A DNA stretch of 64,000 nucleotides, taken from positions 174,985 through 238,984 of IMG/VR virus record IMGVR_UViG_3300042922_001182; one strand, 5' to 3'. The position numbers and the translations under genes were made by a program. Every line of letters begins with the position of its first letter. Position 1 is the first letter of the stretch. This document shows, in pieces, positions 32,137-63,777 of this stretch. The notes beneath the pieces were generated by a model. The model worked only from the letters and a program-made list of their open reading frames with translations, was not told the DNA's origin and ran no database searches.

Positions 32137-34203
32137 GTGACCGCATTGAAACTAACGGACAGCCAGAGAGAAGACCTGGACAGGCTCTTCGAATTCGTGC
32201 TCACCCTCGTCGTCAAGGACGAGTGGCAGGCCGAGGCCAACGAGACCGTCGAGTCGGCGAGGCTGGCCTACGAGTACATGGACGCCATCCTTGGCGTGGA
32301 CGGCAGGACCGAGGCGGAGAGGCAGCTGCTTATCTCCTCGTACGTCGAGCCCAATCCCTACTACAAGAAGCTGCAGGACGACCACGGCATCTCGCCGTTC
32401 GAGGCCAGGTCGGCCAAGAACTTCCAGATCCTCAGCTACGAGCGATTCATCCTCCCGCAGGCCAGGTACGCCGTCTTCCTGGACGAGTACTACAAGGTGA
32501 TGAGGTACTTCACGGCCGTCCTCTACACGAAGGCGTTCGAGTCCGACCTCCTCTACCCCAACTTCTGCAGGCTCTACATCACGATGATGGCGATCCTCCG
32601 GTACCTGGACGCGTCCATGGACCAGACCGGCAACATCGACTTCCTGAGCTCCAGCGCCCTGGAGAACATGCTCAAGTCCCACGGCCTGGGCATCCTGACC
32701 ACCCTCCCCGCCGTGTACCAGCGGAAGGTGCTGAAGAACCTGACGGAGCTCATCCGATTCAAGGGAACGACGACCGCCATCGAGCGCATCGTGGACCTGT
32801 TCGGCTTCAGCGGCGTCTTCATCTACCGTCACTACCTCTTCAAGGACTACCCGAGAGACGAGGCGGGCGCGATCGTCGACTGGTCCTCCCCCGACATCAG
32901 GTTCCTCAAGATCCGGCACGACGCCGAGGACGTCGAGAGGGAGATCCCCGACGCGGCGTCCGACAGCTACGACTTCTTCACTGGGCGCGATCCCTACTGG
33001 CAGTGCAGCCGCGAGGAGCTGCTGGCGAAGGACTTCAACCTCCTGGCCACCAAGTACATCTCCATCGGCTCGACGCTGGACTTCGTCGGCACGGCCCTTG
33101 AGCTGTCCTACTTCAGGACGCTCATCAACCGCATCGAGACGACGGGCATCCCGGCGCACCTCCAGTTCCTCAACGAGAAGATCTCGGCGGAGGAGATCAA
33201 GGTCTACGATGCCCTCATCGCGGCGCAGATCCTCGTCACGAGGTTCCTCGGCTTCAACGATACCATCATCACGAGCGAGACCGGGGTGGCGACCGTCTAC
33301 GGGTACTCCTTCGACCAGGCCGACAAGTTCGAGATCGACGGGGTCAGCGACGTCGTCGACCCGGCCACGCTGCCGAAGGCCGACGAGCAGGCGTTCATCG
33401 AAACGTACCGGCGAAACAACATCTACCGTAGGGCCTTCGAGAGAATCACAGCAGGGACGCAGGACTACGAGACCTACAAGGAGCTCGCCAGGATCCACAA
33501 GGTGAAGTTCATCGCGCAGTACCAGTCGGCGGTCTTCGACGGCTTCGCGACGTACTCCGCGTACCTCCTCACCAGGAACCCGGACCTGCACAAGTACGTC
33601 GAGGAGGCCCTGGTGCTCACCGAGGACCAGGACGTCGACGTGGAGGCCACGAGGAACATCATCGTCGATCGGCTCTCGGAGATCGTCACCTCGCTGGACA
33701 ACTACCTCGACCTTGAGGACGGCGCGTTGAACATCTTCGCCTCGGCCAACTCGGCCCTGGTGGACCAGATCAAGGTCTACATGCGCCAGGTGGTCCAGCT
33801 GTTCAAGTCCTACACCGTGGACCTGCGCGACTTCGTCGTGACCTACATGGTGAAGGGCGACCCCTTCAACACCGGCATCCACTGGCGCGAGAGGAAGACG
33901 CTCACCTCCGAGCTCTGGAAGGCGGACGACGCCTCGGAGCACGCCTACGACAGGTTCTCCATCATCATCCCCGTACAGAGGGGCACGATCGACCACATGG
34001 TCTTCGAGGACGAGCTCTGGATCACCTCCAGGGTGCGTAAGCGAGACGACGCGGCGTTCAGCGACGACAGGACCATCACCGCCAGCACGGCGAGGGCCGA
34101 CCTGCTGCCGCTCAGCGACGACAGGAAGACCCACGGCTTCTTCCAGAGGGCGGACGGCCTGACGGGAATGCACGACACGTTCACCATCACGGTGATACCA
34201 TAA
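32137..34203 (+). CDS. Putative baseplate wedge/tail protein
   Basis: 688 aa; LKNLTELIRFKGTTTAIERIVDLFG motif typical of wedge (tail-I-like) proteins; late promoter at 32096-32107; exact start uncertain. Confidence 0.55.
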   Translation: MTALKLTDSQREDLDRLFEFVLTLVVKDEWQAEANETVESARLAYEYMDAILGVDGRTEAERQLLISSYVEPNPYYKKLQDDHGISPFEARSAKNFQILSYERFILPQARYAVFLDEYYKVMRYFTAVLYTKAFESDLLYPNFCRLYITMMAILRYLDASMDQTGNIDFLSSSALENMLKSHGLGILTTLPAVYQRKVLKNLTELIRFKGTTTAIERIVDLFGFSGVFIYRHYLFKDYPRDEAGAIVDWSSPDIRFLKIRHDAEDVEREIPDAASDSYDFFTGRDPYWQCSREELLAKDFNLLATKYISIGSTLDFVGTALELSYFRTLINRIETTGIPAHLQFLNEKISAEEIKVYDALIAAQILVTRFLGFNDTIITSETGVATVYGYSFDQADKFEIDGVSDVVDPATLPKADEQAFIETYRRNNIYRRAFERITAGTQDYETYKELARIHKVKFIAQYQSAVFDGFATYSAYLLTRNPDLHKYVEEALVLTEDQDVDVEATRNIIVDRLSEIVTSLDNYLDLEDGALNIFASANSALVDQIKVYMRQVVQLFKSYTVDLRDFVVTYMVKGDPFNTGIHWRERKTLTSELWKADDASEHAYDRFSIIIPVQRGTIDHMVFEDELWITSRVRKRDDAAFSDDRTITASTARADLLPLSDDRKTHGFFQRADGLTGMHDTFTITVIP

Positions 34204-34221
34204 GAAAGGAAGAGTAAAGGG

Positions 34222-35022
34222 ATGCAGAAGAAGGAGAACATCGTCGTCAAGACCTTCAAGGAGCTGCTCAAGCTCCGGGAGAAGGTCGTCGGCCTGACGG
34301 CAGAGGCGGTGGGCGCCACCGTCAGCGCCTACGAGAGGCAGCCGATGGGCGGCGCCCTGACGACCGGCCACAAGAAGAACAAGATCATCATCAGGGACGC
34401 CATCACCAACGAGATCCTCCTGGAGGACTGGCCCAACCTGATCGTGCTCCGTGGGCGCACCTACGCCCTGGAGAAGCTGTTCGCCGACCCCATCGGCGCC
34501 TCAGGCACCAACCCGGCGTACGTCAACAACCTGAACCGCAAGATCGCCCTCTTCTCGATCGGCGACGGCGGGGCCCCCTCGGCCGACCCCTTCAACCCCA
34601 CGCCCCCTGAGCCGCTGGACCAGGCGCTCGGCAACCGCATTCCGTTCAGGACGGTGGACTCCAGGGACGCGGCCACCAACCTCAGCGTCCCCGAGCAGTC
34701 GATGTACTACCAGTCCGTCGTCACCAACCTGAACGACGGCGCCCCGTACACCCTGACGAAGTACTACGCCAAGACGTTCGACGTGGCCGACCCCGAGTGG
34801 GGCCTGGACACGGCGAACAACGAGGTGTACAAGAAGATCGTCCTCCGCATCAGCGACAAGGACGCCCGCAACCTCGGCGTGAACGAGATCATGCTCATGA
34901 TCGCCGAGTGGACCGGGAGCACCTACGCGGACATCGAGGCGTACTCCATCATCACCTTCCCGACGGAGTCGCTCCTGGACCCCACGAAGCAGCTCATCAT
35001 CGAGTACTACGTCTACTCCTAG
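34222..35022 (+). CDS. Putative virion baseplate/tail-collar protein
   Basis: NLIVLRGR..LEKLF and FSIGDGG motifs; downstream of the wedge gene. Confidence 0.45.
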   Translation: MQKKENIVVKTFKELLKLREKVVGLTAEAVGATVSAYERQPMGGALTTGHKKNKIIIRDAITNEILLEDWPNLIVLRGRTYALEKLFADPIGASGTNPAYVNNLNRKIALFSIGDGGAPSADPFNPTPPEPLDQALGNRIPFRTVDSRDAATNLSVPEQSMYYQSVVTNLNDGAPYTLTKYYAKTFDVADPEWGLDTANNEVYKKIVLRISDKDARNLGVNEIMLMIAEWTGSTYADIEAYSIITFPTESLLDPTKQLIIEYYVYS

Positions 35023-35036
35023 GCGATCATCAAGCA

Positions 35037-35044
35037 CATATTAT
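35037..35044 (+). promoter_or_regulatory. Early-type motif CATATTAT
   Basis: Upstream of 35102. Confidence 0.6.
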
Positions 35045-60080: not shown

Positions 60081-60300
60081 AGGAGGCAACGTGAAGACGC
60101 TGACGATGTCCTGGAGGATCGTCGACGAGGCCAGGGTCAGGGCCGCCTACGCCAAGCTCATGAGCCTCCAGTGGGACGGGGCGGAGTTCGACTCCGTCGA
60201 GAAGATGGCCGAGGAGCTGGTCACCTTCATGGACGTCTGGGGCAAGAACTTCGGCGAGGTGGACTGGCTCGACCTCGGCATGCAGCGGACGTACGTCTGA
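60073..60300 (+). CDS. Hypothetical protein, paralog of 47030
   Basis: MSWRIVDEARVRAAYAKL. Confidence 0.65.
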   Translation: MPKGGNVKTLTMSWRIVDEARVRAAYAKLMSLQWDGAEFDSVEKMAEELVTFMDVWGKNFGEVDWLDLGMQRTYV

Positions 60301-60311
60301 CGGCGATCGCC

Positions 60312-60351
60312 AAAAAAAAGAAGGGACCTGCGAGGGCCCCTTCTTTTTTTT
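60312..60351. terminator. Bidirectional terminator
   Basis: A8-GAAGGG..CCCTTC-T8. Confidence 0.8.
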
Positions 60352-60364
60352 GCTGCAGAACGAC

Positions 60365-60601
60365 CTACCCCTGCCCCGCGAGGTTCTTGAGGACGACGTT
60401 CTGGTGGTAGTCCGCGCACGGGGCGCACCGGCCGCCGCGCATGGTCTCCAGGGGGACCTCGGAGCTGCACCGGACGCACTCGTTCTCCGGGGGCACGTCG
60501 TACGCCTCCGGGTTGCAGTCCTTGCACTTGCCGTCGACCGTCGACGGGACGTCCTGGCCGCAACCGGTGCAAGACACGTTCTCCCAAAGTGAGTTCTCCA
60601 T
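60365..60601 (-). CDS. Small multi-CxxC Zn-binding protein
   Basis: CTGC, CKDC, CVRC, CAPC. Confidence 0.65.
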   Translation of the reverse strand: MENSLWENVSCTGCGQDVPSTVDGKCKDCNPEAYDVPPENECVRCSSEVPLETMRGGRCAPCADYHQNVVLKNLAGQG

Positions 60602-60634
60602 GGTGATGTCTCCTATCTGCCCTCTAGGGGCTAA

Positions 60635-60985
60635 TTACCAAACCGCCTCGCTAGCCTTGGGCTGACCGGGGTAGAGCGGGGTGCCGTCGAGCTTCACCCA
60701 CCGCCCGTCGGCGTAGTAGGCCCCGACCGTCTTGGTCTCCTCCTCGATGCGCTTGAGGCGCCCCGCGTCGGCCTTGATGGGCTTCCCGTCCTGGGAGACC
60801 CGGGTGGCGGTGTGCCCCACCGCGTACCCGACCGTGACCTCCCCCTGGGGGGTGGCGACCTTGCGGGCCTGGACGTGGTCGAACGCCACGAAGTCCACCG
60901 TCACCCGCCTGCACCCCCGGTGCCCCTCGATCCACAACGGGGCCTTGTAGAAGGTGGGGGCGTCGTTCCTGAGCTGGTCGTTCAT
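60635..60985 (-). CDS. Hypothetical early protein
   Basis: SD AAGGAG; 116 aa. Confidence 0.7.
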   Translation of the reverse strand: MNDQLRNDAPTFYKAPLWIEGHRGCRRVTVDFVAFDHVQARKVATPQGEVTVGYAVGHTATRVSQDGKPIKADAGRLKRIEEETKTVGAYYADGRWVKLDGTPLYPGQPKASEAVW

Positions 60986-61045
60986 GCTCGTTCTCCTTCG
61001 CTAGCTATTGTGGAAAAATAAGAGGCCTGCTAGGGCCTCTTACCT

Positions 61046-61231
61046 CTAGGGGACGACGGTGATGGGGGTGCTCTGCCAGCACTCGGGGCACTTGCCCGAG
61101 GGCTCGGTCGCCATCCCGTGGCGGGCCCCCTCGCCGCCGGTGAGGCGCACCTGGGGGACGCCCACGGTGGAGGTGACGCGGCTGAGGTCGTTGAGGGCGG
61201 CCTGGAGGCCGGGGTTGAACTTGGACTGCAT
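61046..61231 (-). CDS. Small early protein
   Basis: SD AAGGAG; bipartite early promoter at 61272-61302. Confidence 0.6.
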   Translation of the reverse strand: MQSKFNPGLQAALNDLSRVTSTVGVPQVRLTGGEGARHGMATEPSGKCPECWQSTPITVVP

Positions 61232-61271
61232 ATCTCTAATCTCCTTCTACAGACTGTGGGTTATCGTAGGA

Positions 61272-61302
61272 ATAATATGTGTAGACCCCTCCGCTAGATT
61301 CG
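61272..61302 (-). promoter_or_regulatory. Bipartite early-type promoter CGAATCT-N16-CATATTAT
   Basis: Reverse complement, exact 16-nt spacer. Confidence 0.75.
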
Positions 61303-61311
61303 GTTACGACG

Positions 61312-61323
61312 AACAACCCCATA
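61312..61323 (+). promoter_or_regulatory. Late-type promoter AACA-N6-TA
   Basis: AACAaccccaTA. Confidence 0.7.
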
Positions 61324-61347
61324 CCGCAGAGAGGAGAGGCTAGACAG

Positions 61348-61668
61348 ATGTTACACGAGTACTTCATGCTCCAACCCCCCAAGGGGCGCCCAGCCCCCTC
61401 CGACCCCAAGGACGGCGAGGGGCACCTCCCCTCGGTGCTGAGGTCGCTGGCCCGCATCAGGGGGGTCCCCGCCTCCAGGGTGGACCCCGACCTCCCGTTC
61501 GAGGCCTACGACGGCGGCCCGACCGACCGCGTCGAGGCCCTCATGGCGGCGGAGTCCCGCCTGAGGATCGAGATCCCCGACCACTTGGCCGACCAGGCCA
61601 CCACCCCCCGCCGTCTCGCCGGGATCATAGGGAATATCGAGTCGAACAAGCAGCTGTACAGGCATTAG
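61348..61668 (+). CDS. Acyl carrier protein-like protein lacking the Ppant serine
   Basis: GV....V....F.....D.VE..MA.E....IEIPD..A....T aligns by eye with AcpP; DSL replaced by GPT. Confidence 0.65.
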   Translation: MLHEYFMLQPPKGRPAPSDPKDGEGHLPSVLRSLARIRGVPASRVDPDLPFEAYDGGPTDRVEALMAAESRLRIEIPDHLADQATTPRRLAGIIGNIESNKQLYRH

Positions 61669-61679
61669 GAGGATACACC

Positions 61680-62912
61680 ATGTCCAAGGACAAGAAGAAG
61701 CGGAGGGAGCCCAGGCACCTCTCCAAGGAGGAGGTCCAGACCTTGATCATCCTGCCCCAGCAGGAGGTCACCCTCGCCTGGGTCCGGGGGGTGCTGGCGT
61801 CCACCTCCCAGAGGGAGGCCCGGTACCTCCCCAACGACACCCTCACCCTCCCCAAGGGGAGCCTCCCGGGGACGTCGGGCAAGCTACCCGCCTCCGACCT
61901 CAAGACCACGGTCGGCAGGCTCATCTTCAACCGCGCCGTCGTCGAGCCCCTCGGCTACGACGTCCTCGGCTACAGGAACGAGCCCATGGGCAAGCCCGGC
62001 ATCTCCAAATTGGACAGGGACGTGGCCGACCTCCTCCTGGAGGGGAGGGTCACCGCGCCCCAGGCGATCGCCCACGTCGACCGGCTCCAGTGGCTCGGGT
62101 TCTCCGCGTCGGCGTTCGTCAACCCGTCGCTCTCCCCCTGGCTCGTCGTCCCCCTCCCGGAGGTGGAGAAGCGCAAGAAGGAGCTCGTCAAGATCCACGA
62201 GGAGGCCATCCAGGCCGGTGACGTCTTCAAGGCCGGTGAGATCGAGGCGGAGCTGTTGAACCTGGCCCGAGGGATCCTCAAGGACGACCCGAGCTACGCC
62301 ATCTACGCCTCGGAGAGTCGCGGGGACTTCAAGAACAACTACAAGAACACGGCGGTGATGCGCGGCGCCATGCGCTCCGGCGTCGACGGCTCCTACTCGG
62401 TCTCCAGCGCCAACCTGGCCGAGGGGATCCCCCGGGGGGAGTACGATAAGTACGCGGACATGGCCGTGGAGGCGTCCTACGGTCGAGCCGTGCAGACGCG
62501 GATGGGCGGGTACGAGGCCAAGAAGCTTTCCGCCGCCTTCCAGTCCGTAGTTCTGGGCGAACCGTCTTCCGACTGCCTCACACGCGGGCTCCTGACCGTG
62601 GACATCACGCGTGAGAATGCGCCGGGGTTCAAGTACAGGTTCGTGAAGGAGGGCAACCGCCTAGTCGAGCTTACCCCCGACGTCCTCCAGACGTACATCG
62701 GCAGGTCCGTCCAGGTCCGGTCCCCCATGTTCTGCCGGGGCGAGGCCCTGTGTAGCCGCTGCTCGGGCACCCTCTACCACCGGATGGGCATCCGCAACGT
62801 GGGGCTCCTGAGCAGCCGGGTGGGGACGCGAATCCTCAACCTGGCCCTGAAGGCGTTCCACGACAGCTCGGTGAAGACCGCGAGGCTCTCGGTGGACAGG
62901 TACGTGTACTAG
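61680..62912 (+). CDS. rpoC: Phage multisubunit RNA polymerase beta-prime subunit, C-terminal part
   Basis: Bridge helix GRAVQTRMGGYEAKKL, SDCLT, and RSPMFC....LCSRCSG Zn site; split-gene size typical of phiKZ/AR9-like phages. Confidence 0.85.
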   Translation: MSKDKKKRREPRHLSKEEVQTLIILPQQEVTLAWVRGVLASTSQREARYLPNDTLTLPKGSLPGTSGKLPASDLKTTVGRLIFNRAVVEPLGYDVLGYRNEPMGKPGISKLDRDVADLLLEGRVTAPQAIAHVDRLQWLGFSASAFVNPSLSPWLVVPLPEVEKRKKELVKIHEEAIQAGDVFKAGEIEAELLNLARGILKDDPSYAIYASESRGDFKNNYKNTAVMRGAMRSGVDGSYSVSSANLAEGIPRGEYDKYADMAVEASYGRAVQTRMGGYEAKKLSAAFQSVVLGEPSSDCLTRGLLTVDITRENAPGFKYRFVKEGNRLVELTPDVLQTYIGRSVQVRSPMFCRGEALCSRCSGTLYHRMGIRNVGLLSSRVGTRILNLALKAFHDSSVKTARLSVDRYVY

Positions 62913-62916
62913 GGAG

Positions 62917-63183
62917 GTGATGACGATGTTCTACGACGAGCAGAGGCCGGTGGCCTGGGCCGGGGCCGACCCGGACCCGTTCCAGGCGCTCTTCGAGGAG
63001 CTCACCGACGGGCTCCCCGAGCGCCCCATGGCGATCGTGAGGGACTGGTGGGGCGGCAAGTGCATCCAGAGGTCCTCCGACCCCGAGCCCGCCATGGCGC
63101 CGGAGTACGCGGGGTACACGCTGGAGGAGCGCCGGGAGGCGGCGAGGATTGTGACGTACCTGGCCTGCAGGGGCCTGGGGTAG
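62917..63183 (+). CDS. Hypothetical protein
   Basis: SD GGGAGG; 88 aa. Confidence 0.55.
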   Translation: MMTMFYDEQRPVAWAGADPDPFQALFEELTDGLPERPMAIVRDWWGGKCIQRSSDPEPAMAPEYAGYTLEERREAARIVTYLACRGLG

Positions 63184-63210
63184 CTGAGATAGACTAGGAG
63201 GTAACGGGAT

Positions 63211-63777
63211 ATGGCCGAGAGGGTGGTGGACGGCAGGACGGAGCGCCTGTACGTCCTTCTTACGAGGACGGGGAGCCTGGTGGGCGAGCTGGTGATACAC
63301 CCGTACACCCAGCAGCCCTACGGGCACGTGTCGCTGGCTTTCGACGAGAGCCTGAGGGACGTGTACTCGTTCGTGATGGTGAAGGGCTTCGTCAAGGAGA
63401 CCCTGGCGGCGTACCCGCCCGACACGACGTACTCCCTGTACGAGCTGAGGGTCACGCCCGCGCAGAAGCGGGAGGCCCGGAGGCAGGTGGAGGCGCTGTG
63501 GCGCAGGCGGCACAAGCTGGAGTTCAACCTGATGGGCATGGCCACCGGATTCCTGCTCGGCAGGCCCGTGGAGAACAAGGACGCCATGTTCTGCAGCCAG
63601 TTCGTGGTGACGGTCCTGAAGGCGGCGGGCGTGGACTGCTTCAAGAAGCCCGCGTACATGACCACCCCGTTCGACGTGGTGGAGAGCCGGGAGTTCCGGT
63701 TCGTGTCCAAGGGCAGGCTCAGGGACCTGTGGGAGGGCGCCGACGGCGACCCCCGGGAGGACGTGACCAGGGCATAG
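63211..63777 (+). CDS. Permuted papain-like (YiiX/YebB NlpC/P60) amidase
   Basis: YGHVSL (His) precedes MFCSQFV (Cys). Confidence 0.8.
   Translation: MAERVVDGRTERLYVLLTRTGSLVGELVIHPYTQQPYGHVSLAFDESLRDVYSFVMVKGFVKETLAAYPPDTTYSLYELRVTPAQKREARRQVEALWRRRHKLEFNLMGMATGFLLGRPVENKDAMFCSQFVVTVLKAAGVDCFKKPAYMTTPFDVVESREFRFVSKGRLRDLWEGADGDPREDVTRA

What the first reader, a model, noticed from the sequence alone, without database searches (positions are those of the whole stretch)
61348..62912. ACP-like protein with the phosphopantetheine serine replaced, placed ahead of the phage RNAP beta-prime gene
Seen: the 106-aa ORF aligns by eye with E. coli AcpP (GVPASRVDPDLPFEAYDGGPTDRVEALMAAESRLRIEIPDHLADQATT vs [49 protein letters not shown]). 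The invariant Ser of DSL aligns to Pro (GPT). The gene sits 11 nt upstream of the RNAP subunit, behind a late promoter. Known: ACP needs this Ser for Ppant, and host ACP also binds non-lipid partners such as SpoT and MukB. Inference: a non-acylatable ACP mimic or decoy that could titrate ACP partners or AcpS, or an RNAP/virion accessory factor.
Basis: partly seen in the sequence, partly recalled or inferred. Interest (0 to 1): 0.75.

Follow-up and report, generated by a model that had tools for sequence, protein, structure and literature searches.

The report
Serine-less ACP-fold orphan in jumbo phage
A soil jumbo phage carries a real but one-of-a-kind gene for an acyl-carrier-protein-shaped protein that has proline where the cofactor-bearing serine should be, made late in one transcript with a virion RNA polymerase piece; it cannot be an ordinary carrier, and what it does instead remains unproven.

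Summary
ORF 61348-61668 (+, 106 aa) is coding by its GC3 and passes Pfam PP-binding's gathering score. Its model matches only solved carrier proteins. Pro58 (CCG, 61519-61521) sits at the phosphopantetheine serine, within G57-P58-T59-D60 against D-S-L-D. An independent assembly at about 705x depth gives the same sequence.

The gene ends 11 nt before a beta-prime fragment of the virion RNA polymerase (61680-62912). An AR9-type late promoter, AACA-N6-TA (61312-61323), lies 36 nt upstream.

The protein is an orphan. An exhaustive search of 1.84 billion representatives found only itself and weak hits to tandem ACP domains. None of six related RNAP-encoding jumbo phages has any PP-binding gene, and none of four closest metagenomic loci has an ACP-like gene by the polymerase gene. 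The phage encodes no PPTase, ketosynthase or adenylating enzyme. The protein is near neutral (pI 6.4).

So a non-acylatable ACP homologue is supported. A conserved RNAP partner is not. A charge-faithful mimic of host ACP is doubtful.

Best guess, at low confidence: a lineage-specific, protein-binding, obligate apo-ACP analogue. A decaying relic and a virion or RNAP accessory remain live rivals. This is a new variant of a known kind, of moderate interest.

The parts
61272..61281 (-). Early-type (virion-RNAP-type) promoter core CACATATTAT on the minus strand. N6 then G puts the predicted start at 61265. It faces away from the ACP-like gene and drives the small minus-strand genes that begin at 61231.
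   Evidence: There are 21 ATATTAT sites in the genome, 18 followed by N6-G and nearly all oriented toward a gene 30-200 nt downstream. The motif matches the AR9 early consensus AAATATATATTAT-(6N)-G (PMC5312081).
61312..61323 (+). Late-type (non-virion-RNAP-type) promoter AACA-ACCCCA-TA. The predicted transcription start is A 61323, 25 nt before the ATG.
   Evidence: AACA-N6-TA occurs 28 times in sense orientation in 273 upstream 100-mers. Shuffles give 3.9 (maximum 10) and six control patterns give 0-3. It equals the AR9 late consensus AACA-(6N)-TA/G. AR9 has the same motif directly before its homologous beta-prime gene.
61331..61339 (+). Shine-Dalgarno sequence GAGGAGAGG, 8 nt before the ATG.
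   Evidence: Read from the sequence.
61348..61668 (+). ACP-fold (PP-binding homologue) gene, 106 aa. It has a low-confidence (probably disordered) Pro-rich N-terminus of about 21 residues. Helices are I 22-38, II 58-72, III 78-82 and IV 87-104.
   Evidence: GC3 0.935. Pfam 24.4 bits against 20.8. AF2 models. The top 50 Foldseek PDB matches are all carrier proteins, with target-normalised TM 0.61-0.84. The ESM Atlas model reaches TM 0.71-0.80 to ACP clusters.
61519..61521 (+). Codon CCG = Pro58, at the position of the phosphopantetheine-bearing Ser. The preceding GGC = Gly57 replaces the usual Asp.
   Evidence: Ungapped BLASTP to the Motura ACP. HMMER alignments to PDB ACPs. Helix II starts at 58. 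Sequence identical in an independent contig at about 705x.
61666..61673 (+). TAGGAGGA: the stop codon of the ACP-like gene overlaps the Shine-Dalgarno sequence of the next gene. The intergenic gap is 11 nt and holds no terminator.
   Evidence: Sequence. The terminator scan finds none there.
61680..62912 (+). Virion RNA polymerase beta-prime fragment (mid-domain type), 410 aa.
   Evidence: phrog_2962 at 1.3e-68. TIGR02386 rpoC positions 546-792 of 1147. 40-41% identity to the AR9/PBS1 gene annotated as a virion RNAP subunit. Homologues in Madawaska ('beta-prime, mid-domain') and phiR1-37 ('phage structural protein').
61046..61231 (-). First of three small divergent genes (61, 116 and 78 aa, running down to 60365), predicted early and of unknown function.
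   Evidence: GC3 0.95-1.0. An early-type promoter lies 47 nt upstream. No family hits.

Best explanation
Shown: this is a real, lineage-specific gene for an AcpP-type four-helix acyl-carrier-protein fold. The cofactor attachment motif Asp-Ser reads Gly-Pro. The gene sits in one predicted late transcript with a virion-RNAP beta-prime fragment.

Inferred: it cannot carry phosphopantetheine or acyl chains, so if it works at all it works by protein binding. Its recognisable similarity to ACPs lies mostly in helix II, the loop and helix III (D60, V62, E63, M66, A67, E69, I76-P77-D78, D82). That is the face by which ACPs dock on their partner enzymes.

Most likely mechanism: an obligate apo-ACP analogue that docks on an ACP-recognising protein of the host and occupies it without delivering a substrate. 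It would be made late and possibly carried along with virion components. Every step after 'non-carrier' is inference.
For: - Fold and homology.
- Pro at the Ser site, with no Ser nearby. Not an assembly slip.
- The phage has no PPTase (PF01648), no ketosynthase (PF00109), no adenylating enzyme (PF00501), and no second PP-binding gene or paralogue.
- NCBIfam AcpP and PHROG acyl-carrier matches are confined to residues 59/60-86 or 60-93, the helix II-III docking region.
- The gene is lineage-specific and sits in a variable, rearranged part of the genome, which is typical of accessory host-interaction genes.
[quoted passage not shown] 1995). Plasmodium mitochondrial ACP with Ser replaced by Phe is essential and works purely by binding Isd11 (PMC8547962).
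Against: - No homologues exist, so purifying selection cannot be shown. In 64% GC DNA an open 106-codon frame is weak evidence by itself; the antisense frame is open for 104 codons too.
- Net charge is near zero and the pI is 6.4. D35, E48 and E49 of the AcpP numbering are lost, which weakens docking on enzymes that read the acidic helix II.
- A late promoter shared with virion genes is not where host-takeover genes usually sit.
- The helix II-III region is the best-conserved part of all ACPs, so HMM signal concentrating there is expected anyway.
- The host is unknown (soil metagenome), so no partner can be named.
Confidence: 0.3

Rival explanations
1. Decaying or neutral relic. A phage-borne ACP of the kind other jumbo phages carry lost its Asp-Ser motif by two transitions (GAC TCG to GGC CCG). 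It now rides along in the late transcript without a function.
For: It is a singleton with no orthologue among 1.84 billion representatives. It is absent from all related phages checked. Both key residues are one transition away from Asp and Ser. An open frame is cheap in high-GC DNA. The acidic character is lost.
Against: It is only about 25-32% identical to any ACP, yet it still passes Pfam's gathering score and still folds as an ACP in three independent predictions. It has a strong Shine-Dalgarno sequence, tight operon packing and codon-position GC like its neighbours. It sits inside the mRNA of a core virion RNAP gene.
Confidence: 0.3
2. Virion-RNAP or virion accessory. The protein binds the beta-prime fragment or the assembled virion polymerase, or is packaged with it. 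It would act as an assembly, packaging or ejection helper specific to this lineage.
For: Same predicted late transcript, 11 nt from the beta-prime fragment. The late motif precedes mostly large proteins (up to 2764, 1383 and 903 aa, which I read as virion-type). The homologous beta-prime fragment is a virion protein in phiR1-37 and AR9. Jumbo-phage RNAPs lack alpha and omega, and no virion RNAP had been purified by 2020, so its full make-up is open (PMC7598289).
Against: There is no PP-binding gene in AR9, BpSp, Madawaska, LPJP1, phiR1-37 or JD-Fnp1. None lies beside the gene in the closest metagenomic relatives. So it is not part of the conserved enzyme. Adjacency of small orphan genes in phages predicts function poorly, and the synteny here is rearranged.
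Confidence: 0.2
3. Still a carrier. Thr59 (or another residue) is phosphopantetheinylated by a host transferase, so the protein is an ordinary though odd ACP.
For: With a one-residue gap, Thr59 aligns to the attachment position. A large family of PfaA-like tandem ACP domains has Thr, not Ser, at that position (184 of 188 domains). In the one such locus I looked at, the domains sit beside an ACPS-family transferase, so Thr-type carriers may exist.
Against: Ungapped and HMM alignments to canonical ACPs, and the predicted helix boundary, put Pro58 at the site and Thr59 at the following, normally hydrophobic, position. The preceding Asp is missing. There is no PPTase or ACP-using enzyme in the phage. 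From my own knowledge, known PPTases are specific for Ser. The top database hits are tandem-domain proteins whose scores sum over four domains, which is no sign of special kinship.
Confidence: 0.05
4. Not a gene, or a chance resemblance in a spurious high-GC ORF.
For: High-GC genomes have many long spurious ORFs.
Against: The GC3 pattern, the Shine-Dalgarno sequence, the promoter, Pfam above gathering score, the PDB hits, the fold matches and the ungapped alignment to a phage ACP all speak against it.
Confidence: 0.02

Closest known systems
Type II fatty-acid-synthase acyl carrier protein (AcpP; Pfam PF00550 PP-binding)
   Same: Same four-helix fold and helix spacing: helix II has 15 residues and is followed by I-P-D and a short helix III. 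It keeps the conserved D, V-E, M-A, E and IEIPD positions, and Pfam scores above the gathering score.
   Different: Gly-Pro stands in place of Asp-Ser. The pI is 6.4, not about 4. There is a 21-residue low-confidence Pro-rich N-terminus and a longer helix IV. It scores far below the AcpP equivalog cut-offs.
Phage-encoded ACPs (PHROG 5934; for example Achromobacter phage Motura gp339)
   Same: Closest single phage protein: 32% identity without gaps over 66 residues, in a jumbo phage.
   Different: The Motura protein keeps DLDSLD and is strongly acidic. It sits among tRNA and small genes, not by an RNAP gene. The PHROG match here is partial, residues 60-93, E 3.7e-4.
Ppant-independent mitochondrial ACP of Plasmodium and other apicomplexans (Ser replaced by Phe, Cys or Gly)
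   Same: An ACP homologue that has lost the serine, in a setting without the ACP-modifying transferase or fatty acid synthase. It works by protein binding alone (PMC8547962).
   Different: There is no kinship beyond the ACP family. The partner there is the LYR protein Isd11. Here no partner is known, the replacement is Pro, and no conservation can be shown.
Obligate apo-ACP mutants (for example S39A) and apo-ACP toxicity in E. coli
   Same: A folded ACP that cannot be modified, acting as an inhibitor of ACP-dependent enzymes. This is the mechanism proposed here (PMC4736557, citing Keating et al. 1995).
   Different: Those are laboratory constructs that keep the full acidic surface. This natural protein has lost much of it.

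Membership tests
PP-binding / ACP superfamily (PF00550) | Profile match above the curated gathering score | tested here: met
   24.4 bits against 20.8, residues 30-92 on profile positions 3-65 of 67. 25 bits in the genome scan.
PP-binding / ACP superfamily (PF00550) | Four-helix carrier-protein fold | tested here: met
   AF2 with alignment: pLDDT 64, helices 22-38, 58-72, 78-82 and 87-104. The top 50 Foldseek PDB matches are all carrier proteins, rmsd mostly 1.6-3.4 A. The alignment-free ESM model reaches TM 0.71-0.80 to ACP clusters. Caveat: model confidence is moderate, and the alignment used was made of ACP domains.
Functional acyl/peptidyl carrier protein | Conserved Ser at the N-terminus of helix II (D-S-L motif) that bears 4'-phosphopantetheine | tested here: not met
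   G57-P58-T59 lies under D-S-L in the ungapped BLASTP and HMMER alignments. There is no Ser between S43 and S70.
Functional acyl/peptidyl carrier protein | Actual phosphopantetheinylation | not testable with these tools
   This needs intact mass or a labelling assay. The phage has no PF01648 transferase.
AcpP equivalogs (TIGR00517, NF002148-NF002151) | Score above the NCBIfam cut-off | tested here: not met
   13.5-16.3 bits against cut-offs of 70-106. The matches cover only residues 59/60-86.
Conserved subunit set of jumbo-phage virion RNAP | Presence in related RNAP-encoding jumbo phages, beside or apart from RNAP genes | tested here: not met
   0 of 6 records (AR9, BpSp, Madawaska, LPJP1, phiR1-37, JD-Fnp1) have any PP-binding match. 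None of the 4 closest metagenomic loci has one beside the gene.
Conserved subunit set of jumbo-phage virion RNAP | Physical association with the polymerase | tested here: inconclusive
   The complex prediction with the beta-prime fragment gave no verdict. This is evidence neither way.
Ppant-independent ACPs of apicomplexan type | Ser lost and an essential binding partner (LYR protein) | tested here: inconclusive
   Loss of the Ser is met. No partner was sought or is known. This is an analogy, not kinship.

The most novel reading that the evidence does not exclude
The ACP-fold protein is packaged with, or bound to, the virion RNA polymerase of this lineage. It would serve either as an extra assembly or ejection subunit for an enzyme that lacks alpha and omega, or as an injected obligate apo-ACP that jams host lipid or ACP-dependent metabolism from the first minute of infection.
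Probability: 0.15. Interest if true: 0.7.

Novelty: new variant of a known kind. Interest (0 to 1): 0.38.

Why it matters
Carrier proteins without their cofactor site that are kept for another job are rare. The clear case is the malaria parasite's mitochondrial ACP. A phage example would show that viruses can reuse the ACP docking surface as a pure binding module, against host lipid metabolism or in their own transcription machinery. The make-up of jumbo-phage virion polymerases beyond the split beta and beta-prime pieces is still open, so any co-expressed small protein is a candidate worth one pull-down. As it stands, though, this is a single gene in a single uncultured soil phage with no relatives, and its weight is limited until a second genome or an experiment speaks.

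Tried and rejected
- **Orthologue searches.** I tried megablast and tblastn against 50,697 phage records, the word-indexed search of 5.8 billion proteins, exhaustive phmmer over 1.84 billion representatives, and degenerate-pattern scans of viral and genome contigs. They found nothing but the protein itself, the Motura ACP at E 7e-3, and tandem-ACP proteins whose scores add up over four domains.
- **Profile search** with the query plus tandem-ACP domains. It returned only that PfaA-like family, which was useful as an alignment for folding but not as kin.
- **AF2 without an alignment.** pLDDT 48, too poor to search with, although it shows the same four helices.
- **Complex prediction** of the ACP-like protein with the beta-prime fragment. 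No verdict (score 0.00); this is evidence neither for nor against.
- **Microdiversity and selection from reads.** Only one run holds the sequence, a soil metagenome that is probably the source. It is kept as contigs, so variants cannot be counted; it only confirms the consensus.
- **tblastn with the Motura ACP** to map phage ACPs. It found only itself, because the query is too short for that database.
- **Prohead-protease motif (S/A/G-x-E, from memory of phiKZ).** A by-eye look found only one match, and it lies inside helix II. Rejected as evidence of packaging.
- **Fusion to the beta-prime fragment by readthrough or frameshift.** The two genes are in different frames, and nothing in the genome suggests another code. 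Rejected.

Full report
**Where the window lies.** The window is the last 64 kb of a 238,984-bp IMG/VR virus record with terminal repeats and 63.5% GC. The only public run holding it is a soil metagenome. The genome belongs to the jumbo phages that encode split multisubunit RNA polymerases. The 410-aa product of 61680-62912 matches phrog_2962 at 1.3e-68. It is 40-41% identical over its full length to the AR9/PBS1 gene annotated as a virion RNAP subunit. It also hits the bacterial beta-prime model TIGR02386 at positions 546-792 of 1147. Its Staphylococcus-phage homologue is annotated 'beta-prime, mid-domain', and its phiR1-37 homologue is a virion structural protein. More precisely, it is a fragment of the virion enzyme.

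**The gene is real.** ORF 61348-61668 has GC by codon position of 0.66/0.47/0.935, like its neighbours. It has a GAGGAGAGG ribosome-binding site 8 nt before the ATG. It ends in a TAG that overlaps the AGGAGGA of the next gene, which starts 11 nt later with no terminator between. An independently assembled contig of the soil run covers 60300-63300 with no difference at a word depth of about 705. The sequence, including the Pro codon, is thus not a slip of one assembly.

**It is an ACP homologue with an ACP fold.**
- Pfam PP-binding scores 24.4 bits against a gathering score of 20.8.
- It is the only such match in the genome, and there is no paralogue.
- Against PDB sequences, 68 chains match at E<1, and 59 of the 60 listed are ACPs.
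- The ACP of Achromobacter phage Motura aligns without a gap over 66 residues at 32% identity.
- Language-model features (0.91, 173-175 shared) and the Atlas's own alignment-free model (pTM 0.66) point to ACP clusters with TM 0.71-0.80.
- AF2 alone gave a poor model (pLDDT 48). With an alignment of 26 ACP-type domains it gave pLDDT 64.
- Both AF2 models show helices at about 22/27-38, 58-72, 78-82 and 87-104.
- The 50 best Foldseek matches in PDB are all acyl or peptidyl carrier proteins, with target-normalised TM 0.61-0.84.
- The caveat is moderate model confidence and an alignment made of ACP domains.

**The serine is gone.** In the ungapped Motura alignment, and in the HMMER alignments to solved ACPs, G57-P58-T59-D60 lies under D-S-L-D. 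Helix II is predicted to start at Pro58, where canonical ACPs (from my own knowledge of the family) have the serine at the start of that helix. No Ser lies between S43 and S70. Both changes are single transitions away from Asp and Ser (GGC CCG against GAC TCG).

One ambiguity should be stated. With a one-residue gap, Thr59 can be placed under the attachment residue, and MAFFT does this against a family of PfaA-like tandem ACP domains. Those domains carry Thr where others have Ser, in 184 of 188 domains counted. In the one such locus examined they sit in a KS-AT-ACPn-KR-DH synthase next to an ACPS-type transferase. A Thr-linked cofactor therefore cannot be dismissed on principle. Here, however, the register of D60, V62, E63, M66 and E69, the missing Asp and the helix boundary all favour Pro58 as the site. 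The phage encodes no phosphopantetheinyl transferase, ketosynthase or adenylating enzyme. I put 'still a carrier' at about 5%.

**Transcription context.** Two motifs known from AR9 are conserved in this much more GC-rich phage.
- ATATTAT-N6-G occurs at 21 sites, 18 with the G, nearly all pointing at a gene. This matches the AR9 early consensus (PMC5312081).
- AACA-N6-TA occurs 28 times in sense orientation in 273 upstream 100-mers. Shuffles give 3.9 and control patterns give 0-3. This equals the AR9 late consensus, and it precedes mostly large proteins that look like virion components.

In the 116-bp gap before the ACP-like gene, the early-type motif (61272-61281) lies on the minus strand. It serves three small divergent genes. 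The late-type motif (61312-61323) lies on the plus strand, 36 nt before the ATG. AR9 has the same late motif directly before its homologous beta-prime gene, and an early promoter pointing the other way. In effect, the ACP-like gene sits between a late promoter and the polymerase gene.

**It is an orphan and not a conserved neighbour of the polymerase gene.** No orthologue was found in 5.8 billion clustered proteins, in an exhaustive scan of 1.84 billion representatives, or in phage, viral-contig and genome-contig scans. The three weak hits are tandem-ACP synthase fragments whose scores add over several domains.

The closest relatives of the beta-prime fragment are only 45-46% identical. Upstream they carry a conserved pair of about 690-aa and 250-aa genes, or a 61-aa hydrophobic protein, or a gap, and never an ACP-like gene. 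In this phage the homologues of that pair lie 26 kb away (window 32146-35019), so the region has been rearranged. AR9, BpSp, Madawaska, LPJP1, phiR1-37 and JD-Fnp1 have no PP-binding match anywhere.

**What it most likely does.** What is shown is a folded, non-carrier ACP homologue made late with a virion polymerase piece. Everything further is inference.

I favour, at about 0.3, an obligate apo-ACP analogue that docks on an ACP-recognising host protein. Three points support this. The recognisable similarity lies in helix II-III, the docking face. Unmodifiable ACPs are known to inhibit growth, and apo-ACP inhibits glycerol-3-phosphate acyltransferase. The Plasmodium Ser-less ACP shows such proteins can live by binding alone. 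Against it stand the near-neutral charge (pI 6.4), the late timing, and the fact that helix II-III is the best-conserved part of any ACP.

A neutral relic is about as likely (0.3). It is a singleton, two transitions from Asp-Ser, and an open frame costs little in high-GC DNA. Still, its persistence as a Pfam-detectable, foldable domain at 25-32% identity argues for some constraint.

A lineage-specific virion or RNAP accessory (0.2) fits the operon and the open question of virion RNAP composition (PMC7598289). It is not conserved, and the one complex prediction gave no verdict.

**Verdict.** The hoped-for conservation next to rpoC is absent. This is a new variant of a known kind, a Ser-less ACP-fold protein, here in a phage. 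It is of moderate interest because it is a single, unconserved gene in an uncultured phage.

Noticed in passing
P0002, P0003, P0125-P0244; L015:3074-13194: A large family of PfaA-like tandem ACP domains has the motif DLG[IV]DTVKQAE, with Thr where carriers have the phosphopantetheine Ser (184 of 188 domains counted). In a Chloroflexota MAG they sit in a KS-AT-ACPn-KR-DH synthase followed by an ACPS-family transferase. I found no paper on Thr-type carriers in the library.
   Followed up: partly
whole genome G000; e.g. window 61272-61281(-), 61312-61323(+), 35038(+), 30526(+): AR9-type early (ATATTAT-N6-G) and late (AACA-N6-TA) promoter motifs are conserved in this 63.5% GC soil phage, although its polymerase subunit is only about 40% identical to AR9's. 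In AR9 the late motif is read on a uracil-containing template strand, so one may ask whether this phage's DNA also carries uracil.
   Followed up: partly
window 32146-35019 versus 61680-62912; L004, L006, L007: The gene order [about 690 aa][about 250 aa][beta-prime fragment] is kept in three metagenomic relatives and in phiR1-37, where the two upstream genes are virion structural. It is broken here by about 26 kb that begins with an early-type promoter at 35038.
   Followed up: partly
window 63211-63777 (+): The 188-aa protein has a His...Cys pattern and resembles permuted papain-like YaeF/YiiX enzymes (phrog_1128 at 4e-10, although that PHROG is labelled 'enoyl-CoA hydratase-like'; NCBIfam YaeF at E 0.075; no Pfam hit). 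It lies two genes after the ACP-like gene in the same orientation.
   Followed up: partly
window 60365-60601 (-): A 78-aa predicted early protein with several CxxC pairs looks like a double zinc ribbon. It has only sub-threshold Pfam hits.
   Followed up: no
window 62917-63183 (+): A small ORF lies right after the beta-prime fragment. The likelier start is the ATG at 62926, 7 nt after GGAGGTG, rather than the listed GTG at 62917. It has no family match.
   Followed up: no
L004:7637-7936: A SpoVS-family gene sits between the two virion beta-prime fragments in the closest metagenomic relative.
   Followed up: no
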